Assembly: GCA_000388065.2 (NCBI GenBank)
Contig: KB932212.1
Length of the DNA: 15,812 bases
Strand: one strand, 5' to 3'
Origin: Fonticula alba ATCC 38817
Taxonomy: Eukaryota; Protista; Nucleariida
Below are positions 387 to 15,812 of this stretch, in pieces; position 1 is the stretch's first letter, and each line of letters begins with the position of its first letter. The notes under the pieces were generated by a model that saw only the letters and a program-made list of their open reading frames with translations, had not been told where the DNA came from and did no database searches. Position numbers and translations under genes: made by a program.

Positions 387-460
387 GTATGTCTCCTCTC
401 CCTCCTCCTCCCCCCCCCTGTGCATTCTCACCCTCCGCGCCTGCCGCATTGTTTTTGCAT

Positions 461-508
461 CCTCCTCCTCCTCCTCCTCCTCCTCCTCCTCCGCCTCCTC
501 CTCCGCCT
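461..508 (+). repeat. (CCT)n microsatellite
   Basis: Ten perfect CCT units at 461-490, continuing imperfectly to about 508. Confidence 0.9.
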
Positions 509-613
509 AGGCCCTTCTCTCCCCTCCCAATCACGCACACACATCCCCCGCCACCTCCCCTCCACCCCCTGACGCGCCTGCCCACGCCGCCGCCACCACC
601 ACCCAGATCCGTC

Positions 614-830
614 ATGGCCCCCCAGCTTGAGTTTGATCTCACCCAGGTCCTGTGCCAGTTCCTGGACCCGCACCTGGCTCTGCGCCTCATCGAGTTCGCT
701 GAGAAGCGCCAGGTCTACAACGAGAAGGACATCCTCCAGGCCAAGTTCGACATCGTCAAGAAGACCACCATCCCCGACCTGATCAGCCAGGTGTTCTCGG
801 AGCTGTACCCCGGTCAGCCCCTCCCGGCCG
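614..830 (+). CDS. EIF3E: eIF3 subunit E, first coding exon 'A' (N-terminal eIF3e domain)
   Basis: ATG at 614 (CCGTCATGG). Encodes MAPQLEFDLTQVLCQFLDPHLALRLIEFAEKRQVYNEKDILQAKFDIVKKT..., matching the eIF3e N-terminus (DLT...FLD.HL...YNEKE.LQ.K). Ends in phase 1 at GTGCGC donor (831). Confidence 0.92.
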
Positions 831-973
831 GTGCGCAGCTTTCCCGGCCCCCTCCCCCCGCCGCGCCGGCCCCCGTGCACACGCATGCCATCCGCCACCC
901 TGACCCCCACTCCGCTTCCTGGGCCCATCTCCCCCTTCCCCCCACCCCCCCCCTTTTGGCTGCCGGCACGCAG

Positions 974-1131
974 AGTACGATGTTGACCTCGAGGAGAAGC
1001 GCGACCTCCTGCTCGAGGAGTACCAGGAGTCCTGTGGCGAGATCATGCCCATCCTCCAGGATGGTGAGCTCGTCGAGACCCTCCGCCAGGATGGCACCTT
1101 CACCCTGGCCTTCCTGATCAGCGAGTACAAG
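974..1131 (+). CDS. EIF3E: eIF3 subunit E, coding exon 'B'
   Basis: CAG acceptor (971-973), phase 1 compatible with exon A (G+AG=Glu). Encodes EYDVDLEEKRDLLLEEYQESCGEIMPILQDGELVETLRQDGTFTLAFLISEYK. Ends in phase 0 at GTACGC donor (1132). Confidence 0.88.
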
Positions 1132-1252
1132 GTACGCATGTGTCCTGGACACGCCCCTGCCCGCCGCCCGCTGCCCGGCCCTCGATCTCACGCCCCTCTT
1201 GCGTATGTATGTGTGTCTGCATGCCGCCTATGCGCGCACCCGGACCCTACCC

Positions 1253-1413
1253 NNNNNNNNNNNNNNNNNNNNNNNNNNNNNNNNNNNNNNNNNNNNNNNN
1301 NNNNNNNNNNNNNNNNNNNNNNNNNNNNNNNNNNNNNNNNNNNNNNNNNNNNNNNNNNNNNNNNNNNNNNNNNNNNNNNNNNNNNNNNNNNNNNNNNNNN
1401 NNNNNNNNNNNNN
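1253..1413. other. Assembly gap (161 N) inside eIF3e, at the point where exons C and D belong
   Basis: Run of N flanked by C-runs on both sides, between the exon B donor and the exon E acceptor. Confidence 0.99.
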
Positions 1414-1508
1414 CCCCCGCGCGCGCGCACACACACCCACCCACACACACACGCCCATGCCGCGCCCCCACCCCCACTCACCCGCCGCCCCCACACGACG
1501 ACACGCAG

Positions 1509-2150
1509 GAGTTCCTCAACGAGTACTCCCTGGTCAAGCAGCGCGCGTGGCTCCTCCACTGGTCGCTGTTTGTCTTCTTCAACGCCCCGAAGACCAGCCC
1601 GACTGCCTCTGCCGCCGCGGACGAGGCGTCCGATGAGGACGCCGACGACGCCGACGACACCCCCATCGAGACCGTCATCGATGACACGCTGATCGACCTG
1701 TTCTCCACCTCCGAGGTCTTCCGCCAGGCGCTGCAGCTGCACGCGCCGCACCTGCTCCGGTACCTGGCCGTGGTGGTGGTCATCTTCCACCGCCGCCGCC
1801 TGACCCTGCTGAACCTCATGTCCATGTTCAACCAGGAGGCCCACATCTATGCCGACCCGATCCTGGAGCTGATCAGCTGCGTCTACCGCAAGTTCGACTT
1901 CGACAGCGCTCGCGGCAAGATCCTCGAGTGCAAGGCCGTCTTCGAGAATGACTACTTCCTGAACCCCTACTGGGACCAGTTCTTCGAGGCCGCGCGCCTC
2001 TTCATCTTCGAGACCTACTCCCAGATCCACAAGCGCATCGACAACAAGATGCTGGCCGAGTACCTGCATCTGGACATGGAGGCCGCCGAGCGCTGGATCG
2101 TCAACATGATCCGCAACGCCTCGCTCGATGCCAAGATCGACTCCACCAAC
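1509..2150 (+). CDS. EIF3E: eIF3 subunit E, coding exon 'E' (most of the PCI domain)
   Basis: CAG acceptor (1506-1508), GTGCGT donor (2151), 642 nt, phase 0/0. Contains QRAWLLHWSLFVFFN, PHLLRYLA, YADPILE, FDFD, ENDYFL, ARLFIFETYSQIH and AERWIVNMIRNASLDAKIDS, all hallmark eIF3e/Int6 motifs. Confidence 0.96.
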
Positions 2151-2388
2151 GTGCGTCGCGCGATGTGGTGCTGGCGGCCAAGAGGGCGGCGGCGGGGGCG
2201 GGGGGGTAGCCCTGGCCCCGCGCCATCCTCGCCCACTTGTGCATGCGCGCCCCCTCCTTCTCTCTCTCTAACACACACTGTCCTGCGCGATGACCTTCCC
2301 CCTGACTCCGTCCCCTCCCCGGCCGCTCGCACGTCCACACATGTGCTCCCCCCCCCCCCCCCCCCCCCGCTGACCCCCCTACACACAG

Positions 2389-2715
2389 AACGTCGTCATC
2401 ATGGGCCAGAGCCAGCGCAACCCCAACGCCCAGGTGATCGAGATCACCCGCGGCCAGGAGATCAAGAACCAGGGCCTGCTGCAGCGCATCAACGAGCTGG
2501 AGTCCTCGCAGAACAGCACGACCTCCGGCGCGGCGGGTGCCCGCGGCGGCGCTGCCGGCGGCAAGCCCGGCAACAAGTCCGGCCCCAAGTCCGGCGGCCT
2601 CGGCAGTGGCGGGGCTCGCGGTGGTGCCGGCAAGGAGGGCGGGCACACCGCCGGTGGTGCTCGTGGCAGCGCCATCTCCTCGGGTGCCCGCCGCCAGCCG
2701 GCCACCGCCCACTGA
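2389..2715 (+). CDS. EIF3E: eIF3 subunit E, last coding exon 'F' with Gly/Ala-rich C-terminal extension
   Basis: CTGAC branch (2370-2374), CAG acceptor (2386-2388). NVVIMG continues AKIDSTN as in eIF3e 'AKIDS..HVVMG'. TGA stop at 2713-2715. Confidence 0.9.
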   Translation, partial: NVVIMGQSQRNPNAQVIEITRGQEIKNQGLLQRINELESSQNSTTSGAAGARGGAAGGKPGNKSGPKSGGLGSGGARGGAGKEGGHTAGGARGSAISSGARRQPATAH

Positions 2716-3283
2716 GAGCGGCGCGCGATGTGCGAGAGGGAGCCATGAGAGCGTGCCACCCTCCGCGCGCCTCCACGCACATGCATGCACACACGTGTGT
2801 GCATGCATGGCGGACCCTCGGGGGGGGCGCGCGGCGCACAGGTGTGCTTTGCGTGCGTGTGTGCGCTTGTGTGTTTGTGTTGCTTCCTCCCCCTCCCCCC
2901 TTCTCCTCTCCTCTCTTTCTCTTGGGGTGTCCCCCCCCCCCTCCCTCCGGGGAGGGACGGGGCGCGCGCACGCAAGAGAAGGGGGGAGAGAGGGAGAAGG
3001 CCGCGAGAGTGTGTGCGCGCGCGTGAGCCGCGTCAGGCCCGTGGCGCGAAAGGCATGCTCCTCATCAGATCTCTCCCTGCGCGCGCGGGGGGCCACAGAG
3101 GACGAGACCGAGGCCCCCCAGAGGCGCCGACCTCCTCTTCCCCCGCGCGTTTCCCGAAATCCTCCCCCCCCATAACCACACACGCATGATGTCGTCGTCG
3201 TCTACATGTGCGTGTGTACGTGCACACACACACACACACACATACAGTTTCCCGTTGTCCCCTCTCGTCCCTTCCTTTCTGTA

Positions 3284-3289
3284 AATAAA
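3284..3289 (+). terminator. Probable polyadenylation signal of eIF3e
   Basis: AATAAA about 570 nt after the stop, followed by TG/T-rich sequence (CTTGTTGTT, TTTGATTGTTG). One of very few AT-rich spots in the region. Confidence 0.6.
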
Positions 3290-6200
3290 TGACCTTGTTG
3301 TTCCGAAGCCCGCGTGCCGCCTTTGATTGTTGATCTGCCGGACGCGGCCCGTGTACGTGCGTGCATCGCGCACTGGGGAGGCGGGGGGAGGGGGGGGGGA
3401 GATCCGCACTCGCGGCCCCCACGGGAGGAGAATGAGGGCGCGGCCCGGCGAGCTGGCGCCCTGGTGGTACCAGCCACGTGATGCGCCACCGAGTGATGGG
3501 CCACGCTGCCCATCGGTTCGGTTAATAATGGTAACTGGCCCTCGCCGCGCGGGAGTCCGGCGGGCCGGGGCGGCCCTGCGGAATTGGGGCATTCTGGTGC
3601 TGCTGGCGCGTGCGGCAGTCTGCAGGCCGGCGTCGGACCGCCCGCGGGGGGGGGGGGGGGAGACTCTCGGTGGCCGAATTCCCGAACCGGCCCCGCCGTA
3701 CGGCCGGCGACCGAGCCCGGGGCAGGACCCGGGGACCGGGTACCGCCACTACGGTGGCCCAGGACGGGCGCGCGTGCGGGCGGGGAGGGGGGGGGGGGAA
3801 TGGCCCGACAGCGGCCTTCCTGCCCGCCCCCGCCCCCCGCTCCGGGAGAGAGCCACGGGGAGGCACAGTCGTCAGGGCACGCGCGCCCCTGCACCCGCCA
3901 CAGGGGCGGCAGCCGCACGGCAACACCGCGCCAGGTGGTGCATTTGCCCGGGGCGCGGACAGGGCGGCGGTGTGATCCTTCGAGAAGGGCCCCGGGGGCA
4001 GGGGGGCCTGTCCGCCGAGGGTGCCGCGCGCATGTGAGGACCATTGCACAAGGGATGCCCGCCCGACACGGCGCCACTCGGCCCGCCGCGGCCCAAACAG
4101 CCCCGGGGCCCGGTCTCGGGCCTGGCTGGGGTGGCGACTCCGCCCCGCCGTTGCGCTGGCGCCGCGCGACAGAGACAGACGCCCAGCCACGCAGCCGCCC
4201 TGGGGCGGGAGCGAGGCGGGGGGGGGGGGGGGGGGAAAAGACTAGACTTCGGCCGGGGCTGCTGTGCACCCTCTCCCTTGGGCCAGGCGCGGGCGTGAGC
4301 GCACACGCCTGGCCCAGAATGCCGCGTTCGGCATTTGCCATGACACAGGGACGCACCTGCTGCAAGGGAAGGAGAAGGGCGCCGGGGGCGGGGCGGGGCC
4401 TGCACCAACCCTAAATGCAGGCTGCTTGCGGGAGGGAGAGCCCCTTTTTCCGCGTATGCGCGCGGAATGCCCCCCCCCCCCCGGTCCGGCGCCGTTGTCG
4501 CCCCCCGGGACTCGGGACGGAGCAGGTACGAGGGGGGAGGGGCCGCGCGGGCCTGGCCGCGGGTGTCCGGCACCGACAGGCCGGGGGACCGGGAGGGGTT
4601 GGGGCGCTGGCTGATGGCGCCCCGCCCGCCTCCCCGCGGCCAACGGGGGGGACAGGGAGAGCCCCTAGCCGGGGAGAAGGGGCCCAGCCGGCATACCCCC
4701 GGGGCATTTAGGGACCTGGCGGAGGGGGGGGGGGGAAGCCATGTAAGTAGTGTGTATATATTGCGCGGCGTATAAAATGGCCGGATTAGACCCTCGAGCG
4801 CGGGCGGGCGCGGCTTCCCCGGTGTACAAAGAAAGAAGTGCGCGCATCACCCCCCCCCCCCCCCCGCTGGCACAGGCCCCGGCACCGACGCCGACGCGCC
4901 GTGCGCGTCACTCTGGGCGTGTGTGCGCGTGTTTGTGCACACAGACGGAGGGGGTGCCCTTTTTTCTCGGGCTCAAGGGGAGGTATTTTCTGGGGAATGC
5001 GCTGGCCCGACTATTCGGCTGGTGCATTCCTCACGGGCATGTGTGTCGGCGCGCCCTCCTGCCCTCAGCCCCCCCCCCCGGGCTCCTTCCTCGCCAAGCG
5101 GCCGTCGACAGAGCGTCTCCCCCCGCGCCGCCCCCCCGCGCCGCCCCCCCCCCCCCCCCGGGCACAATGGCCTCGGCTGGAATGGGGGACCGGACCGTAA
5201 GGCGTGCCTGGCCTGCGTCCCCCTCTGCCCTGTGCGGCTACTGCCGTGCGGCCGTTGTTGTGCCGATTCTACGTCCGAGGGGCGCGCGCGCGGCCGGCGG
5301 GGGGGAGGAGGGGGGCGGACTGGCACCCGCGCAGGAATGCCGTCCTGCCGGGCCGGGTCGTCGAGCGGTCCGTCGTCCGCTCCTCCCCGGGTGCGGACGG
5401 TGTCCCCCCCCCCTCCTCGCTCGGCGGCCGGAGTCGCTGCGGTTCCTCGGCCGGGCGAGGCCGTCGGGGCCCGGCGCCGGCGAGCGCCCTCCGTCCGCCG
5501 CTCAACCGGCGGTCCGGCCGCCCCCGGGTGACCCGTCTACCTGGTGCCTTGTTGTCGGTGCGGGGCGCGACGGCCGGCGGCGCAGGCACTGGCCCCGGGG
5601 CCTGACCCTGGCGATGGTCAACGCCCTACGCCGCGCGGAAGGCCGGGCCCGGCCGGCCCTGTCTCCCCCTCGCTGTCGGGCTGGATTGGGGATGTGCCCG
5701 CCGCGCCGTGCCGCGCCGCCCGGCCCCACTGACCGGCCGGAGAGTCCACACCGGGGGGGGGGGGGGGGGGGCCGGGGCCCCGGGGGCGTCGCGCGGCCGG
5801 CCGCGGCAGCCTGAACCCTCTTTTTTCCTTCGGCCGGCCAGCCGCGGCCGGGGCGGCACACCGGACAAGGGACACCCCGGCGGCCAGTCCGTTCGCGAGG
5901 AATGTGTTTGCCAATTTGCCGGCCGTCTGCCTGGCGCCTGGGAGGGCGGGGGGGAGGGGACGCGCGCTGTGTATTTTAAAAAGCCCGCCCCAGGCGAGGC
6001 GCCCGCCGGCGGGCGAGGGGGGCCGTGTCGCGGGGAGCAGGCGCCGGACGGGCAAACAGACGGACGCCGCCCTGACAGACGGACAGAGTTGTCTGTGTGT
6101 GTGTGTGTGTGTGTGGGCCGGCGGGCTCGCGGCCCCTCGCCCGGGACCACCACACCGAGGCTCCCTCTCGGTGACACCCGGGCCGGTGTTCCTTCCCTGC

Positions 6201-7298: not shown

Positions 7299-10200
7299 AT
7301 GGCTTCCAACAATTCTCTCCGCGACCAGACGGTCAGCACCGACCTCGAGGTCCGCCAGCAGGAGTTCGCTAAGAAGAAGTGGACCTGGCTCATCGACAAG
7401 AACGAGGGCGCCCTCGCGGTCCACATCATCAAGGACCACGGCGGCGGCAAGATCACCGTCCAGGCCAACGACGGCAAGGTATGTCCCCGAGGCCTTCCCC
7501 CCCCCCCCCCCCCCCCCCCCCGCCCCTCCCACGCAGAAAGGACACCCACTCACACGCATCTGCCCCGCGCCCACCCCCCCCCACCATCACAGGAGTACGA
7601 GGTCTCCCAGGACGACCTGGAGCCCATGAACCCGCCGAAGTACGACAAGTCCGAGGACATGGCCACCCTGCTCCACCTGAACGAGTCTTCGGTGCTGCAC
7701 AACCTCCGCGACCGCTACATGTCGGACCTGATCTACACCTACTCCGGTCTTTTCCTGGTGGTGATCAACCCCTGGCGCAACCTGCCCATCTACTCGGATG
7801 AGATCATCCAGCTGTACAAGGGCAAGAAGCGCAAGGAGATGCCCCCCCACATCTTCGCCGTCTGTGACGAGGCCTACCGCGACATGCTCGGCAACAAGGA
7901 GAACCAGTCCCTCCTGATTACCGGCGAGTCCGGTGCCGGTAAGACCGAGAACACCAAGAAGGTCATCCAGTACCTGGCCTCCGTGGCCGGCACCTCGGGC
8001 ACCAACCAGAGCCAGCTGGAGAAGCAGATCATCCTGACCAACCCGCTGCTCGAGGCCTTCGGTAACGCCAAGACCATCCGCAACAACAACTCCTCGCGCT
8101 TCGGCAAGTTCATCCGCATCGAGTTCGGCTCCGATGGCAAGATTGTCGGTTGCAACATCGACAACTACCTGCTGGAGAAGAACCGTGTCATCACCCACGC
8201 CAAGGCCGAGCGCTCTTTCCACATCTTCTACCAGCTCATCGCCGGTGCCACCGCCGAGCAGAAGAAGGACCTCCTGCTGGAGGGCGTCCGCGCCTACCGC
8301 TACCTGGAGGGCGAGGCCAACATCGACAATGTCGACGATGCCAAGGAGTTCCGCGACACCCTGGACGCCATGCGCATCATCGGCTTCTCCGAGGAGGAGC
8401 AGACCTCCATCTGGCAGATTCTGTCCGGTCTGCTGCAGTTCGGCAACCTGGAGTTCGTCGGGTCTCGTCGTGATGAGACCGCCTCCTTCAAGGATGCCGC
8501 CACGGCCGACCGCGTGTCGCACCTGCTCGGCATCAAGTCCGCCGACTTCCAGCGCTGCCTGCTGAAGCCCCGTGTCAAGGCCGGCCGCGAGTGGGTCACC
8601 CAGATGGTGACCACCGACCGCGCCGGGCACAACTCCAATGCCCTGGTCAAGGCCGTCTACGAGCGCCTCTTCAAGTGGATCATCTCCAAGATCAACTCCA
8701 CCCTGGAGACCCACGGCCGTGCGCAGACCTTCATCGGCTGCCTGGATATCGCCGGTTTCGAGATCTTCGACCACAACAGCTTCGAGCAGCTCTGCATCAA
8801 CCTGACCAACGAGAAGCTCCAGCAGTTCTTCAACCACCACATGTTCGTCCTCGAGCAGGAGGAGTACATGCGCGAGGGCATCGAGTGGAAGTTCGTCGAC
8901 TTCGGCCTGGATCTCCAGCCGACCATCGATCTCATCGAGAAGCCGCTCGGTATCCTGTCCATCCTGGACGAGGAGTGCCTGCTGCCCCGGTCCACCGACA
9001 AGACCTTCATCGAGAAGTGCCACATGCAGCATGAGAACAAGCACGACAAGTACCACAAGCCGCGTCTCAACCCGGACATGTTCATCCTGGACCACTATGC
9101 CGGCTCGGTGTCCTACAACACCGCCGAGTGGATCGAGAAGAACAAGGACCCGATCAACGACAATGTGGCCTCCCTGTTCGCCAAGTCCACCAACCCCCTG
9201 CTGGCCACCATCTTCGAGGACTTCCAGGTCAATGATGATGGCACCCTGGTCACCGACCGCAAGGGCAAGGCCAGCAGCTTCATCACCGTGTCCCAGCGCC
9301 ACAAGCAGTCGCTCAATGCCCTGATCAGCACCCTGCGTGCCACTCAGCCGCACTTCGTTCGTTGCATCATCCCCAACGAGTCCAAGAAGCCCGGCATGAT
9401 TGATGCTCCGCTGGTGCTGGATCAGCTCCGGTGCAATGGTGTCCTGGAGGGTATCCGCATTGTGCGCCTCGGTTTCCCCAACCGCATTCCCTTCGCCGAG
9501 TTCAAGCAGCGCTACGAGCTCCTGGCCCCGGGCATCATCCCCAAGGGCTTCATGGATGGCCGTGTCATTGCGCAGAAGCTCCTGGACGCCCTCAAGATCG
9601 AGAAGGAGTTCTACCGCATCGGTCAGTCCAAGGTCTTCTTCAAGGCCGGCACTGTGGCCGAGCTGGAGGAGCGCCGTGATGCCCGCCTGAGCGAGCTGAT
9701 TTCCGGCTTCCAGGCCGCCGCTCGTGGTGCCCTGGCTCGTCGTGCCTTCCGTCGTCAGCACGGCAAGGAGGAGGCCATCCAGCTGATCCAGAAGAATGCC
9801 CGTGTCTTCATCGATCTCTACCAGTGGAGCTGGTGGAAGCTGTACCGCAGCATCAAGCCGCTGCTTGGTGTCCACCGCCAGGACCAGCAGGAGAAGGCCC
9901 TGAAGGATCGCATTGCCGAGCTGGAGGCCCAGCTGGAGCGCGAGGCCGCCGCCGCCCGCGAGGCCGCTGCCCGTGCCTCGGAGCTGGAGAAGGACAACCG
10001 CGAGCTGGAGACCGATCTGGACACCGCTCGCAATGCCCACGCCGAGGCTGTTGCTTCCTACAAGAACAGCGAGGAGCGCCGCCAGAAGCTGGCCACCATT
10101 GTCTCGGACATGGAGGCCCAGGCCGACGAGTACGAGCAGGAGATCGACACCCTGGCCGAGTCCAACCGCAAGGCCCAGGCCGACATCAAGTCCCTCAAGG

Positions 10201-11087
10201 CCCAGCTGGACGACGATTCCAAGGCCCGCGCCGCCGTCGAGGAGGCCAAGGCCCAGTCCCAGCGCGAGCTGGAGCTGCTCAAGTCCCAGCACGATTTGGA
10301 CTCTCGTCGCCAGGCCGAGGAGGCCGAGGCCGAGCGTGCCAAGCAGGCTAAGGCCCTGGCCGAGGCCGCCGCCAAGGCCGAGGCCCTGTCGGCTCAGCTT
10401 GAGCGTGCCAAGAAGGACGCCAAGAGCGCCTCCGCCGAGAAGGACTCCCTCCAGGCCGAGCTGGACGCCCTGCAGGCTCAGCTCCGCGAGGCCGACAAGG
10501 CCAAGCGCCAGCTCGAGTCGGAGCTGCGCGATGCCCAGACCGAGACCCGCCAGGTTACCTCGCGTCTGGAGGCCGCCGAGGCTGCCAAGGCCGAGGCCGA
10601 GGCCCGCGGCAAGAAGCTCAACGACCAGATCGAGGAGGCTCTCACCTCTCGCGCCGTGTCCGCCCAGCAGGTGGAGAATGCCCAGGCCGAGATCGAGGAC
10701 CTGCGCAACGAGCTGGCCGAGGCCAACAAGGCCAAGGCCACCGCCGAGCAGGCCCTCAAGTCCGCCGAGGCCAAGATCGACCAGGCCGACGACCAGCTCC
10801 ACGAGGAGGTCAGCAAGCGCAAGGACCTCGACGTGCAGATTGTCGCCCTGCAGGCCGAGAACGCCTCGCTGGCCGACAAGCTGGCCAAGGCCAACGACGC
10901 CGCCGACAACTCCCTCATGGACGCCCTGCGTGCCGAGCGCGCCAAGGTCGCCGCCCTGGAGGAGAAGAACAAGAGCGACTCCTCTCGCCGCCTGGCCGCC
11001 GAGGAGAAGAACAACCAGCTTCTCGAGAAGAACTCCTCTCTCGAGGCCAAGATCCGCTCCATGCGCGAGCTGTTCGCCGGCAACTAA
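7299..11087 (+). CDS. Myosin II (class II) heavy chain, join(7299-7478,7593-11087), 1224 aa, short coiled-coil tail
   Basis: CCACCATGG start. SH3-like N-terminus (EFAKKKWTW, MNPPKYDKSEDMA). P-loop GESGAGKTENTK (from 7923), switch I NNNSSRFGKF, switch II DIAGFEIF, PHFVRCIIPN, QLRCNGVLEGIR. Two light-chain-binding motifs ending in the class II WSWWKLY hook, then the invariant Pro (IKPLL, 9858) and a proline-free coiled coil to TAA (11085-11087). Strong C/G3 codon bias throughout. Confidence 0.97.
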   Translation: MASNNSLRDQTVSTDLEVRQQEFAKKKWTWLIDKNEGALAVHIIKDHGGGKITVQANDGKVCPRGLPPPPPPPPRPSHAERTPTHTHLPRAHPPPPSQEYEVSQDDLEPMNPPKYDKSEDMATLLHLNESSVLHNLRDRYMSDLIYTYSGLFLVVINPWRNLPIYSDEIIQLYKGKKRKEMPPHIFAVCDEAYRDMLGNKENQSLLITGESGAGKTENTKKVIQYLASVAGTSGTNQSQLEKQIILTNPLLEAFGNAKTIRNNNSSRFGKFIRIEFGSDGKIVGCNIDNYLLEKNRVITHAKAERSFHIFYQLIAGATAEQKKDLLLEGVRAYRYLEGEANIDNVDDAKEFRDTLDAMRIIGFSEEEQTSIWQILSGLLQFGNLEFVGSRRDETASFKDAATADRVSHLLGIKSADFQRCLLKPRVKAGREWVTQMVTTDRAGHNSNALVKAVYERLFKWIISKINSTLETHGRAQTFIGCLDIAGFEIFDHNSFEQLCINLTNEKLQQFFNHHMFVLEQEEYMREGIEWKFVDFGLDLQPTIDLIEKPLGILSILDEECLLPRSTDKTFIEKCHMQHENKHDKYHKPRLNPDMFILDHYAGSVSYNTAEWIEKNKDPINDNVASLFAKSTNPLLATIFEDFQVNDDGTLVTDRKGKASSFITVSQRHKQSLNALISTLRATQPHFVRCIIPNESKKPGMIDAPLVLDQLRCNGVLEGIRIVRLGFPNRIPFAEFKQRYELLAPGIIPKGFMDGRVIAQKLLDALKIEKEFYRIGQSKVFFKAGTVAELEERRDARLSELISGFQAAARGALARRAFRRQHGKEEAIQLIQKNARVFIDLYQWSWWKLYRSIKPLLGVHRQDQQEKALKDRIAELEAQLEREAAAAREAAARASELEKDNRELETDLDTARNAHAEAVASYKNSEERRQKLATIVSDMEAQADEYEQEIDTLAESNRKAQADIKSLKAQLDDDSKARAAVEEAKAQSQRELELLKSQHDLDSRRQAEEAEAERAKQAKALAEAAAKAEALSAQLERAKKDAKSASAEKDSLQAELDALQAQLREADKAKRQLESELRDAQTETRQVTSRLEAAEAAKAEAEARGKKLNDQIEEALTSRAVSAQQVENAQAEIEDLRNELAEANKAKATAEQALKSAEAKIDQADDQLHEEVSKRKDLDVQIVALQAENASLADKLAKANDAADNSLMDALRAERAKVAALEEKNKSDSSRRLAAEEKNNQLLEKNSSLEAKIRSMRELFAGN
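7479..7592 (+). other. Intron in the myosin CDS (114 nt, phase 0)
   Basis: GTATGT donor, poly-C tract, ACTCAC branch-like site (7548-7553), CAG acceptor. Removing it restores a contiguous SH3-like domain (..ANDGK|EYEV..). Confidence 0.9.
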
Positions 11088-11444
11088 GCGGCGCGCCCCC
11101 TTGTCTTTGTTCTGGCCCCACTCCTCCTCCTCCTTCTGGAAGAGGGTCCGGGGGGGGGGGATCCGTCCACACCACCTGCGTCTTCCTTCCCCCCGCGCGC
11201 GCGCGCGCGCCATATCACGGTGAATCAGTTTCGCCAGGATATATATGCGCATGCCTGCTGTGTGGGGGAATGGCGCGCACTGGTGCGCGGCATCCCCCCC
11301 CCCCGTCTCCTCCCCCTCAGCCGGGGTGTGTGCATATTCAATACACATTCATCCTCCCTCTTTCTTCTGCCTTTTTGTTTTGTGCTCTGTCGTGCTTCTT
11401 TCCTTTGCGCGTGTGTGGGTGGGTGGCTGTGCTGGGATTCCGCC

Positions 11445-11450
<6 letters not shown>

Positions 11451-11480
<30 letters not shown>

Positions 11481-11489
11481 CACACACAC
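11451..11489 (+). repeat. Compound (CT)n-(CA)n microsatellite between convergent 3' ends
   Basis: (CT)13 at 11451-11476 followed by a CA run to 11489. Confidence 0.9.
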
Positions 11490-11650
11490 GTACATATATA
11501 TGTATACACATACGCACACACAGCCAAACGAACGGGACTCCTTTCGGCCGGCGCCCCACACCAGCCGCCAGCTTCCACGAGCAGGACCCTATCCTCCGCC
11601 GTTGCTCTCGTGTCCTCCCAGTTGCTCCTACTGCCACCATGTACCACACA

Positions 11651-11700
11651 CACGCATACACACGCATACACACGCATACACACGCATACACACGCATACA
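11651..11700 (+). repeat. 10-bp tandem repeat (CACGCATACA)x5
   Basis: Five exact adjacent copies without spacers, embedded in CA-rich sequence. Confidence 0.93.
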
Positions 11701-11803
11701 CAGAGACACACACACACACACACACATCCATGGCCCTTCCCTTGTCAGAGAGTTGCTGTATTCCGGCGCCTTACATATACAGGAGTGCGCACGCCCGGCC
11801 GCC

Positions 11804-12442
11804 CTAGACCACGGCCAGGGACTCGAGCGACCGGCGCACCGAGTCGATGACAGACGACACGGCCGCCATCTCCAGCGAGGTGACCCTCTCCTCGGAGTCG
11901 CCCGGCTGCGGGTCATACTGGCTCAGGATGTCCCCCAGGTTGAGGCTGACCAGCAGGCGGGACAGGGCCGGCGGCGAGACGGCCGAGTGCCGGGCCGCCA
12001 GGCTGTCGGCCACATACTGCGCGGCCTGCCGGGCCACCAGCTGAGTCAGCTCATCGTACGTCATGGTCAGGGTGGCGGCCTGGTCGCGGCCCGCCCCGGG
12101 CCCCAGGAACCCCGGGTGCCCCCGGCGCCCGAGAAGCAGCAGCACATCGTACGTGCCGGAGGCCGCCATGGGGTCGTCCTGCTGGGCGTCCGCGCCGGCC
12201 GGCCGGACGGCATCGAGCGGGCCACGGTGCCGAGAGGCGCCGGCCCCGGCGTCGCCGGTGCGCGACACCAGCAGGACCACCTGCGGCGGGGCTCCGCCGG
12301 TCGACCCCCGGGGGCCGATGTTCAGCAGGCACCGGTCGCGCAGGCAGGTGAGCGTCGCCTGCAGCCGCAGCGTGTCCGCCGGATCGACGGCCGTCTGGAA
12401 GACGATGGCCGGGTGGGGCGGCGTGGCCGCGGTGAGGCTCAT
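11804..12442 (-). CDS. PSMG3: Probable proteasome assembly chaperone 3 (PAC3/PSMG3-like), 212 aa, apparently intronless
   Basis: From ATG 12442 to TAG 11804. Ordered blocks LQATLTCLRDRCLLNIG / TYDVLLLLGRR / DELTQLVARQAAQYVA / SRLLVSLNLGD resemble, from memory, PAC3 blocks such as 'VVCTAFSSHILVV / FNVSVIFGKR / DEPMLVACARQLIEHI / RPLVLSLGLKD'. The upstream 29 codons of the tracked ORF are microsatellite-derived. No HMM search was run. Confidence 0.62.
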   Translation of the reverse strand: MSLTAATPPHPAIVFQTAVDPADTLRLQATLTCLRDRCLLNIGPRGSTGGAPPQVVLLVSRTGDAGAGASRHRGPLDAVRPAGADAQQDDPMAASGTYDVLLLLGRRGHPGFLGPGAGRDQAATLTMTYDELTQLVARQAAQYVADSLAARHSAVSPPALSRLLVSLNLGDILSQYDPQPGDSEERVTSLEMAAVSSVIDSVRRSLESLAVV

Positions 12443-12454
12443 CGTGCCGTCAGA

Positions 12455-14363: not shown

Positions 14364-14722
14364 NNNNNNNNNNNNNNNNNNNNNNNNNNNNNNNNNNNNN
14401 NNNNNNNNNNNNNNNNNNNNNNNNNNNNNNNNNNNNNNNNNNNNNNNNNNNNNNNNNNNNNNNNNNNNNNNNNNNNNNNNNNNNNNNNNNNNNNNNNNNN
14501 NNNNNNNNNNNNNNNNNNNNNNNNNNNNNNNNNNNNNNNNNNNNNNNNNNNNNNNNNNNNNNNNNNNNNNNNNNNNNNNNNNNNNNNNNNNNNNNNNNNN
14601 NNNNNNNNNNNNNNNNNNNNNNNNNNNNNNNNNNNNNNNNNNNNNNNNNNNNNNNNNNNNNNNNNNNNNNNNNNNNNNNNNNNNNNNNNNNNNNNNNNNN
14701 NNNNNNNNNNNNNNNNNNNNNN
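14364..14722. other. Assembly gap (359 N)
   Basis: Run of N preceded by a C homopolymer. Confidence 0.99.
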
Positions 14723-15812
14723 GCCCCGGGCCGGGTCGATCGGCGGGAGGGCGTTTCAGTCGGCCTGGTAGCTGCCGGCTCCGGGCGACGCCCGCCGTCC
14801 TGATCGTAGGTTTCATCGGCTCACGCCGTCATCGCTTCCCCCCAACACACCGGGGAGGCGAGAAATTGCACCCGGCCGGGGGGGGGGGCCCTGCGGTCCA
14901 TTCCTCCGAGACGCACGCCAGGGCAGGGCGGTCCGTTTGCAGGCGCACTTCGGGGCGCCCACCCGCGGCCCGGACACGCGCACACACACACACACACACA
15001 CACACCGCACAGGCGTGTCGATCCGCGCGCGCGCGCGCGTACGGACCCCGGCGCACGCACGCGACCGGGCGCGCACCCCGGGCCCTGAGCGCGTTGGGAA
15101 CGCCCGGCCAGGAGCCGATCGGCCGGCGGCCGTGGGGATTCCTGCCCCGACCCCCCGGCACCAGGGGGGGCCAGGCGCCATGGAAAGGTGGCACACGGCC
15201 GCCCGGTGCGGCCCGGTGCGGCCGGGGGGGGGGGGGGGAGCAACAGAGCAGGCAGGCGTGCCCCGCGCCCCTGCCGCCGGCTCCCCTGGTCCCTGGACCC
15301 GGGGAGCCGGCCGGCGGGCTCGACGGCGGCCTCGCCGGGCCGAAATGCGGCCCAAGCGCGCCGGGGCTTATGAAAGCCGGACGTGCTTCGCGCTTTCGGT
15401 TAAGCGAATACATGGGTAATGACTGGAACTTCGCGCGGGCCGGGGGCGAGCGCGCGCGCGCGCACACACACACACACACACGCTGGCCGGCCGACACCGC
15501 CGGCGAGCGGCGATGCTCCCGGGCCGGCGCCGCGCGCCGCGCGCAGGTGCAAATTCCCGGCCCGGCGCGGGCCGGCCGGAAGCCAGGCCAGGGCCTTCTT
15601 TAGCCGGAGCTGGCAGGCCGGCCGCCCCGCCCGGGTGGACCACCTGCGTGCCCTCGCGAGGGGACATTATGCCGGCCCGGAGGCATGATGACACATCGCC
15701 CAGGCTCAGGACAACCGGGGGATCGCATCCTGGTCTGGGCTCCGCTCGCGCAGGGGCCGGTGCCTGGCGCCGGCTTGAGTGTGTGCGACCCATCCCCCCC
15801 CCCTCCCCCCCC

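What the first reader, a model, noticed from the sequence alone, without database searches (positions are those of the whole stretch)
9858..11087. Myosin II with a roughly 409-aa tail: a natural heavy-meromyosin-like motor
Seen: after the invariant Pro the tail runs 409 residues with no further Pro and almost no Gly, and ends at TAA with no non-helical tailpiece. Codon bias stays coding-like up to the stop. Low-complexity UTR-like DNA and a convergent gene follow, leaving no evident further exons. Established: animal myosin II rods are about 1100 aa with the filament-assembly region near the C-terminus. Even the short amoebozoan and fission-yeast myosin II tails are roughly 650-700 aa. Inference: a rod of about 60 nm, near S2 length, probably cannot build conventional bipolar filaments or fold into the 10S state. 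It may act as a two-headed dimer, a minimal antiparallel tetramer or an adaptor-anchored motor, which would be an unusual contractile design.
Basis: partly seen in the sequence, partly recalled or inferred. Interest (0 to 1): 0.72.

Follow-up and report, generated by a model that had tools for sequence, protein, structure and literature searches.

The report
Short-tailed myosin II of nucleariid amoebae
The amoeba Fonticula alba and its nucleariid relatives make a genuine myosin II whose rod is cut to about 408 residues, a third of the usual length, and ends in a conserved cap of their own, so it is a natural test of how much rod a contractile motor needs.

Summary
The window is Fonticula alba. 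The gene (exon 7299-7478, in-frame 114-nt intron, exon 7593-11087) encodes the annotated 1224-aa myosin heavy chain.

After the invariant Pro (codon 9858-9860) come 408 residues with no Pro and 3 Gly. They are helical to the end and stop at TAA (11085-11087). GC3 stays near 0.9 up to the stop and falls to 0.6 after it.

The stop is not an artefact. Five further nucleariid-type sequences have 407-410-aa tails: a Lithocolla transcript, three cDNA-like contigs and two genomic contigs with different downstream genes. All six tails align without one internal gap at about 39% identity.

The six form a clade (98/96). Its nearest relatives are long-tailed: an aphelid (1784 aa), an unnamed 2327-aa protein, and chytrids near 2300 aa. 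The truncation is therefore derived.

The tail is colinear with the first ~345 residues of canonical rods, up to the conserved first skip residue. About 60 clade-specific, well-conserved residues follow, with no LMM.

Function is inferred only. I favour small self-assembled bipolar oligomers over adaptor anchoring. A second, long-tailed myosin II in Fonticula is not excluded.

The parts
7299..7478 (+). Exon 1 (60 codons): start codon and the first part of the N-terminal SH3-like domain
   Evidence: ATG at 7299. GT at 7479. The spliced product equals P0001. Myosin_N matches residues 25-69 at 23.1 bits, below the 27-bit cut-off, while orthologues pass.
7479..7592 (+). Intron of 114 nt, GT..AG, poly-C rich, in frame and without a stop, so the raw ORF reads through it
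   Evidence: Sequence. The 38 Pro-rich codons are absent from P0001 and from all orthologues.
7653..9644 (+). Myosin motor domain (spliced residues 81-744)
   Evidence: Pfam Myosin_head E=5.7e-281, profile 2-679 of 679. The best 60 PDB hits are all class II heads, matched end to end. The P-loop GESGAGKT, switch I NSSRFGK and switch II DIAGFE are read directly.
9696..9857 (+). Lever arm: IQ1 (FQAAARGALARR) and IQ2 (IQKNARVF..WSWWKLY), the sites for the essential and regulatory light chains
   Evidence: Read. WxWW and the junction are invariant in all nucleariid sequences. The Pfam IQ match is weak.
9858..9860 (+). Invariant head-rod junction proline (residue 816)
   Evidence: KPLL junction, invariant column P37 of alignment A1.
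9861..10892 (+). Proximal rod, tail residues 1-344: heptad coiled coil colinear with the first ~345 residues of canonical myosin II rods
   Evidence: Tail-HMM positions 1 to ~310-350 align without offset to the start of animal and chytrid rods. Heptad Viterbi. The 28/3 charge period is.
10314..10316 (+). Nucleariid-specific skip residue (tail residue ~152, placement within a few residues)
   Evidence: A +1 heptad shift is called at 152 in each of the six orthologues separately. No +1 skip is called there in any other rod analysed; the aphelid shows a discontinuity of another type at 153. Canonical rods have one residue fewer over HMM positions 1-307.
10893..10907 (+). Second skip residue (tail ~345-349), at the position of the conserved first skip of canonical rods
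   Evidence: A +1 shift is called at 345-356 in all six. The first discontinuity falls at 337-362 in animals, Corallochytrium, Naegleria, chytrids and P0124. In NM2B the first skip, Q1193, lies 350 residues after the Pro (PMC13438149; Pro 843).
10863..11084 (+). Clade-specific C-terminal cap (DKLxKA..ADNSLLEALKAER..RR..AEER..IREIL): helical, with a partly polar core and no tailpiece
   Evidence: Conservation peaks at 0.50-0.54 mean pairwise identity against 0.39 overall. An HMM of the last 82 columns hits only the nucleariid set (E 1e-31 to 1e-34) among about 375 class II sequences. There is no Pfam or PDB match.
11085..11087 (+). Stop codon TAA
   Evidence: Orthologues stop within 3 residues of the same alignment column.
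11088..11803 (.). 3' flank: low-complexity DNA and microsatellites, with no coding signal
   Evidence: Sequence. GC is flat at ~0.6 in all three codon phases.
11804..12445 (-). Convergent neighbouring ORF (213 aa from MSLTAAT..), which leaves no room for further rod exons
   Evidence: No Pfam match. The exact sequence is not in the collection, so its reality as a gene is not shown.

Best explanation
This is the class II myosin heavy chain of Fonticula alba. It has a full motor, an SH3-like N-terminus and two IQ motifs. Its rod was truncated in the common ancestor of the sampled nucleariid-type lineages and has been kept at 407-410 residues (about 60 nm) since.

The rod consists of the ancestral proximal rod up to and including the conserved first skip residue. 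A clade-specific, conserved cap of about 60 helical residues then replaces the whole light-meromyosin part and the tailpiece. These points are shown.

The rest is inferred. The heavy chains dimerise into a two-headed molecule that cannot adopt the three-segment 10S fold. The strict absence of indels, a second skip residue about 197 residues before the conserved one, the 28/3 charge period and an electrostatic optimum at a 97-98-residue parallel stagger suggest that the rods still pack against each other. The molecule would then build small bipolar oligomers, nucleated tail to tail by the cap, rather than long filaments. Such oligomers would supply contractility for cytokinesis and amoeboid movement.
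For: Identity and gene model.

The stop is real:
- GC3 drops at the stop.
- The Lithocolla transcript is marked 'complete', 1219 aa.
- Intronless contigs L002, L003 and L004 (~3.8 kb) have short UTRs; L004 ends in an A-run.
- Two further genomic contexts have different genes close after the stop: an NPR2-domain gene 257 nt downstream in L001 and a convergent amidase 152 nt downstream in L005.

Length constraint: six tails at 32-62% pairwise identity show no gap in the first 405 columns.

Derived truncation: the nucleariid clade has support 98/96. It is sister to the aphelid (1784 aa) plus P0190 (1686 aa) at 99/95, then P0124 (2327 aa) at 100/99. Chytrid and other fungal myosins are 2053-2368 aa.

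Anatomy: colinearity with canonical rods ends near HMM position 345. Skips fall at 152 and 345-356 in every orthologue. The cap is private.

Packing signals: the 28/3 period is present in 4 of 5 tails. The 97-98-residue stagger is the best electrostatic parallel offset, mean z 2.9, in 5 of 6 tails. The 14-residue stagger is also high. The same method recovers 97-99 on animal LMM.
Against:
- The 98-residue signal is only as strong as in the first 408 residues of animal rods (z 2.8-3.9). That part is soluble on its own as S2. It is weaker than in LMM (z 5-7).
- The fundamental 28-residue charge period is weak.
- No conserved antiparallel electrostatic optimum was found (best mean z 1.5).
- The tail has no strongly positive cluster like the animal assembly-competence domain.
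- Pfam Myosin_tail_1 is below threshold in all members.
- Skip positions are placed only to within a few residues.
- A long-tailed paralogue in Fonticula cannot be excluded with these tools.
Confidence: 0.55

Rival explanations
1. Adaptor-anchored, unipolar motor. The rod is a spacer of fixed length, and the conserved C-terminal cap docks the two-headed dimer onto a scaffold at the membrane or division site. Heads radiate out, as proposed for fission-yeast Myo2 in cytokinesis nodes. No filament is made.
For: The cap is the best conserved part of the tail after the head-rod junction, and it is clade-specific. Its heptad core is partly polar, as expected for a binding surface. Nucleariids are the sister group of fungi. 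Purified S. pombe Myo2 (85-90 nm tail) forms no filaments and is unipolar in nodes (PMC7710916). No antiparallel charge optimum was found and the net tail charge is -16 to -29.
Against: A mere spacer would tolerate heptad-sized indels, yet none occur in six lineages. It would also have no need for a 197-residue skip spacing, a 28/3 charge period or a 98-residue stagger optimum. No partner is known.
Confidence: 0.28
2. Non-assembling two-headed dimer that acts alone, as a low-duty crosslinker, tension sensor or cargo motor. The cap only stabilises the end of the coiled coil.
For: The length equals long S2, and HMM-like fragments are soluble (established knowledge). The tail is strongly net negative.
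Against: A trigger or stabiliser would not need about 60 conserved residues or a fixed total length. Class II kinetics with two low-duty heads are ill suited to solitary work (established knowledge, not tested here).
Confidence: 0.1
3. The short myosin is a specialised extra paralogue, and a conventional long-tailed myosin II elsewhere in the Fonticula genome does the filament work. This reading can hold together with any of the mechanisms above.
For: The genome could not be searched directly. P0124, an unnamed 2327-aa myosin II from a 523-kb metagenome contig, branches just outside the aphelid plus nucleariid group and its organism is unknown.
Against: No Fonticula, Lithocolla or other named nucleariid long-tailed class II protein appeared in the word search, the exhaustive HMMER search of representatives or the search with P0124's motor. 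The nearest named relatives of P0124 are chytrids at 55-57% identity. The scan's own notes on this genome list no second class II myosin, although they cover only part of the genome.
Confidence: 0.15
4. Annotation or assembly artefact: a false stop, or unrecognised downstream rod exons.
For: An assembly gap (run of N) lies at about 14.4-14.75 kb. No RNA reads were available.
Against: Six independent sequences from transcript-like and genomic sources end within 3 residues of the same column. The coding signal ends at the stop. Downstream neighbours differ in three genomic contexts. There is no rod-like ORF downstream.
Confidence: 0.02

Closest known systems
Conventional long-tailed class II myosins (animal non-muscle myosin 2; chytrid and other fungal myosin II of ~2050-2370 aa; aphelid Amoeboaphelidium 1784 aa)
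   Same: The motor, SH3-like N-terminus, two IQ motifs, WxWW-KPLL junction, heptad rod starting at the Pro, first skip residue ~350 residues after the Pro and 28/3 charge period.
   Different: The rod stops ~60 residues after the first skip. The whole LMM, the assembly-competence region and the non-helical tailpiece are missing. There is an extra skip at ~152 and a private C-terminal cap. Myosin_tail_1 is below Pfam's threshold.
Heavy meromyosin (the proteolytic head plus S2 fragment of animal myosin II)
   Same: Two-headed architecture with a ~60-nm proximal rod colinear with S2.
   Different: It is a natural, complete gene product under length selection, and it ends in a conserved cap that HMM lacks. 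HMM is a fragment, not a family.
Schizosaccharomyces pombe Myo2
   Same: A holomycotan class II myosin with a shortened rod. Myo2 forms no filaments in vitro and is organised unipolarly through its tail (PMC7710916), a possible functional analogue.
   Different: The Myo2 rod is 85-90 nm (about 700 aa). It sits in the dikaryan fungal part of the tree, far from the nucleariid clade (rep_P0143, 1526 aa; its identity with Myo2 is assumed from length only). The tails share no cap.
Acanthamoeba myosin II (own knowledge, not tested here)
   Same: A short-rod myosin II that still makes small bipolar minifilaments through a short antiparallel overlap at the tail end. This is the model for the favoured mechanism.
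   Different: Its rod is about 87 nm and has a regulated non-helical tailpiece. It is an amoebozoan with no sequence relation to the nucleariid cap.

Membership tests
Class II myosin heavy chain | Myosin motor domain most similar to class II heads | tested here: met
   Myosin_head E=5.7e-281. The 60 best PDB chains shown (of 150 matched) are all class II heads, 840-950 bits, aligned over residues 15-816.
Class II myosin heavy chain | N-terminal SH3-like domain (Pfam Myosin_N) | tested here: inconclusive
   Fonticula scores 23.1 bits against a 27-bit cut-off. The orthologues Lithocolla (47.3) and P0004 (39) pass.
Class II myosin heavy chain | Two IQ motifs, the second ending in WxWW, then the invariant junction proline | tested here: met
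   Read directly and invariant across alignment A1. The Pfam IQ model itself is below threshold.
Class II myosin heavy chain | Heptad coiled-coil rod with skip residues starting at the proline | tested here: met
   The heptad register is continuous except for +1 skips at 152 and 345-356 in all six orthologues. There are no Pro residues and the model is helical to the end.
Class II myosin heavy chain | Pfam Myosin_tail_1 at the gathering threshold | tested here: not met
   17.9-32.6 bits against the 38.1-bit cut-off in all five members scanned.
Class II myosin heavy chain | 28-residue charge repeat of the rod | tested here: inconclusive
   The 28/3 harmonic reaches 6-11 (random expectation 1) in 4 of 5 tails. 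The fundamental is only 0.7-3.5, against 3-11 in equal windows of animal rods.
Class II myosin heavy chain | Phylogenetic placement among class II sequences | tested here: met
   It is nested among aphelid, fungal, amoebozoan, heterolobosean and animal class II motors. No sequences of other myosin classes were available as an outgroup.
Filament-forming conventional myosin II | Distal rod (LMM) with an assembly-competence region, and usually a non-helical tailpiece | tested here: not met
   The tail ends ~60 residues after the first skip. HMM positions beyond ~350 match no canonical rod. There is no tailpiece.
Filament-forming conventional myosin II | Salt-dependent self-assembly into bipolar filaments | not testable with these tools
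   Only an electrostatic stagger calculation was possible.
Node-anchored fungal myosin II (S. pombe Myo2 type) | No filament formation; tail end bound to a scaffold | not testable with these tools
   Precedent from PMC7710916. No partner or localisation data exist for nucleariids.

The most novel reading that the evidence does not exclude
Nucleariids, the sister lineage of fungi, run all their actomyosin contractility on a single myosin II with only a 60-nm rod. A private ~60-residue cap after the first skip residue is a new, minimal assembly domain. It joins dimers tail to tail into bipolar units of roughly 110-120 nm, the smallest natural contractile myosin II assemblies. The cap would be a transferable module that makes an HMM-like molecule contractile.
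Probability: 0.25. Interest if true: 0.8.

Novelty: new variant of a known kind. Interest (0 to 1): 0.58.

Why it matters
Myosin II is the only motor known to contract actin networks, and textbook contraction depends on bipolar filaments built by the distal two thirds of the rod. Here a whole lineage of amoebae next to the fungi has discarded that part. What remains has been kept at a fixed length for what must be a very long time, given about 39% tail identity.

Two outcomes are possible. If these cells still divide and crawl with this motor, the ~60-residue cap plus an S2-length rod defines a natural minimum for myosin II assembly or anchoring. That bears on how fungal node-anchored myosin II arose and on the design of compact contractile units. 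If the motor does not assemble, it would show that class II myosins can work outside filaments more widely than the single fission-yeast case suggests.

The protein is small, almost intronless and expressible, so the question can be tested directly.

Tried and rejected
- **Tail-only word search:** it returned only the query, probably because Ala-rich words swamped it.
- **Other 'short' class II hits:**
  - P0034, P0047, P0063 and P0068 (~1160-1243 aa) are frameshifted or fragmentary animal non-muscle myosins.
  - P0139 (tail 406) sits beside a 2379-aa close relative, which points to a truncated gene model.
  - P0151 (tail 393) sits beside striated-muscle myosin and has an odd N-terminus, which also points to a truncated or faulty model.
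  - P0149 (tail 390) lies among long-tailed fungal myosins and is followed by an unassigned ORF on the same strand. I read it as a probable truncated model too, which is a judgement, not a result.
- **Known domains in the cap:** Pfam and PDB profile searches gave only chance-level coiled-coil matches.
- **Antiparallel electrostatic scan:** no conserved optimum (best mean z 1.5), so it cannot support a specific overlap.
- **AlphaFold2 hairpin:** the single-chain model folds the rod into a hairpin at model residues 213-225 with pLDDT below 50. I treat this as the usual single-chain artefact, not as evidence for fold-back.
- **Literature:** searches on Fonticula or nucleariids with myosin II, and on short-tailed myosin II, found no paper that discusses this tail. 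The Kollmar 2017 data set includes Fonticula without comment on tail length.
- **Spliced model:** I searched exon 2 by reference and used the database's own spliced protein P0001.
Full report
**Where and what.** The window is from Fonticula alba. Translating exon 2 (7593-11084) retrieves 'myosin heavy chain [Fonticula alba]', 1224 aa, at 100% identity. The raw ORF 7299-11087 reads through a 114-nt GT..AG intron (7479-7592). The intron is in frame, stop-free and poly-C rich. Removing it gives exactly the database protein P0001.

**Observation.**
- The invariant junction proline is residue 816, codon 9858-9860, the first base of the finding.
- After it come 408 residues with no Pro and 3 Gly, ending ...MRELFAGN, then TAA at 11085-11087.
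- Third-position GC is 0.89-0.93 along the tail and 0.92 in the last 150 nt. It drops to 0.60 in all three phases after the stop.
- Downstream lie about 700 nt of microsatellite and low-complexity DNA, then a convergent ORF at 11804-12445.
- No + strand ORF further down has rod-like composition.
- A single-chain AlphaFold2 model is helical to within two residues of the end.

- Five further sequences are full-length relatives at 52-63% identity: a Lithocolla globosa transcript flagged 'complete' (1219 aa), P0002 (1230 aa), P0004 (1232 aa), and the genomic P0005 and P0014.
- P0002 and P0004 sit on intronless contigs of ~3.8 kb with short UTRs. One of these ends in an A-run.
- P0005 and P0014 sit on genomic contigs where a different gene follows closely. 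One is an NPR2-domain gene 257 nt after the stop. The other is a convergent amidase 152 nt after it.
- The tails measure 407-410 aa. At 32-62% pairwise identity (mean 39%) the six tails align with no gap in the first 405 columns.

An artefactual stop or hidden exons can be dismissed, and the length itself is under selection.

**Class and relatives.**
- Pfam gives Myosin_head at E=5.7e-281. The 60 best solved chains shown are all class II heads, matched end to end.
- Two IQ motifs, the WxWW motif and the KPLL junction are invariant.
- Myosin_N is just below threshold in Fonticula but passes in orthologues. Myosin_tail_1 is below threshold in all members.
- An exhaustive HMMER search of 1.84 billion representatives collapses the short-tailed sequences into P0001's own cluster. 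It then finds only long proteins: P0124 (2327 aa, unnamed), fungi of 2053-2299 aa and the aphelid Amoeboaphelidium (1784 aa).
- In a careful maximum-likelihood tree of motor domains the six short-tailed sequences form one clade (98/96). That clade is sister to the aphelid plus P0190 (99/95), and then to P0124 (100/99).
- Chytrid myosin IIs are about 2300 aa.

The short rod is thus a derived truncation at the base of the sampled nucleariid-type lineages.

**Anatomy of the tail.**
- A heptad Viterbi on the alignment, and on each sequence alone, finds two +1 skips, at tail residue 152 and at 345-356.
- In animals, Corallochytrium, Naegleria, chytrids and P0124 the first discontinuity lies at 337-362.
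- In NM2B the first skip, Q1193, is 350 residues after the junction Pro (PMC13438149; Pro 843).
- A profile of the nucleariid tail aligns without offset to the first ~310-350 residues of animal and chytrid rods. Those rods are one residue shorter over that span, which fits the extra skip at 152. The profile also matches at 197-residue offsets.
- Positions beyond ~350 match no other rod. It has no Pfam or PDB match.
- This cap (consensus DKLxKA..ADNSLLEALKAER..RR..AEER..IREIL) is, with the junction and an L-DDS-K--A-EE stretch near residue 115, the best conserved part of the tail.

The molecule is therefore head, then proximal rod through the first conserved skip, then a private ~60-residue cap. 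The light-meromyosin part and the tailpiece are gone.

**Signals of rod packing.**
- The 28/3 harmonic of the charge repeat is present in four of five tails at the level of equal-length windows of animal rods. The 28-residue fundamental is weak.
- I scanned all parallel staggers for electrostatic complementarity against heptad-preserving shuffles. The best offset was 97-98 residues (mean z 2.9; five of six tails at 2.7 or above), and 14 residues was also high.
- The same method recovers 97-99 on animal LMM (z 4-7). On the first 408 residues of animal rods it gives z 2.8-3.9.
- The nucleariid rod is therefore S2-like in strength, not LMM-like.
- Antiparallel overlaps gave no conserved optimum.
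- The nucleariid-specific skip lies about 197 residues before the conserved one, which is the canonical skip spacing.

**Mechanism.**
- Shown: a complete class II motor with a fixed-length 60-nm rod and a conserved private cap.
- Inferred from length: the three-segment 10S fold cannot form. In NM2B, bend 1 is 317-323 residues and bend 2 about 680 residues after the Pro.
- Favoured (about 0.45): the fixed length, skip spacing and charge pattern mean that rods still pack. The cap nucleates tail-to-tail association into small bipolar oligomers.
- Main rival (about 0.3): the cap docks a unipolar dimer to a scaffold, as proposed for fission-yeast Myo2. Myo2 has an 85-90 nm tail and forms no filaments (PMC7710916).
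- Less likely: a solitary dimer.
- Open: a long-tailed paralogue in Fonticula. None appeared or 73 or in the scan's notes, but the genome could not be searched directly.

**Novelty.** The protein is annotated, and Fonticula is in a published myosin inventory (PMC5583752). I found no paper that mentions the short, conserved tail. It is a new variant of a known kind.

**Uniqueness is not certain.** An unnamed environmental clade (P0128, P0147, P0243, P0184; tails 426-539 aa) is sister to animal non-muscle myosins (95/83). One of its members is a complete ORF on its scaffold.

Noticed in passing
P0128, P0147, P0243 (L010:128-4135), P0184: An unnamed environmental clade of class II-like myosins has tails of only 426-539 aa, several ending in acidic non-helical tailpieces. 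It is sister to animal non-muscle myosin II (95/83). P0243 is a complete intronless ORF on a 4.2-kb marine metagenome scaffold. Short rods may have arisen more than once.
   Followed up: partly
L006:10001-16984 (P0124): An orphan intronless 2327-aa myosin II lies on a 523-kb metagenome contig (GC 0.39). It is the closest long-tailed motor to the nucleariid plus aphelid group (100/99). Its nearest named relatives are chytrids at only 55-57% identity, and its organism is unknown.
   Followed up: partly
P0155 (Amoeboaphelidium occidentale), tail residue ~153: The aphelid rod, from the sister group of the short-tailed clade, shows a heptad discontinuity of another type at the same place (~153) as the nucleariid-specific skip. 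It may be a shared older irregularity.
   Followed up: no
window 389-3023 (+): An eIF3 subunit E-like gene lies upstream: eIF3_N in ORF 389-1114 and a PCI domain in ORF 1140-3023, in different frames, so it is spliced. Another note of the scan (s1-066039) says its exons look permuted; I did not check this.
   Followed up: no
window 11804-12445 (-): The convergent 213-aa ORF (MSLTAATPPH...SLESLAVV) has no Pfam match and no exact copy in the protein collection. Its identity and reality as a gene are open.
   Followed up: partly
window 7587-11348 (-): A 1253-aa antisense 'shadow' ORF runs opposite the myosin gene. It is Gly/Leu/Val-rich, a by-product of GC3 near 0.9, not a gene.
   Followed up: no
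window 11430-11730 and ~14400-14750: (CT)n, (CA)n and an (ACACGCAT)n-type microsatellite lie in the myosin 3' flank. A run of N (assembly gap) lies further downstream, beyond the convergent ORF.
   Followed up: no
L001:608-4422: In the GC-rich Fonticula-like relative the same gene has at least two short introns in the N-terminal region (called pieces 608-811, 865-1011, 1303-4422), against one in Fonticula. Intron positions were not compared.
   Followed up: no
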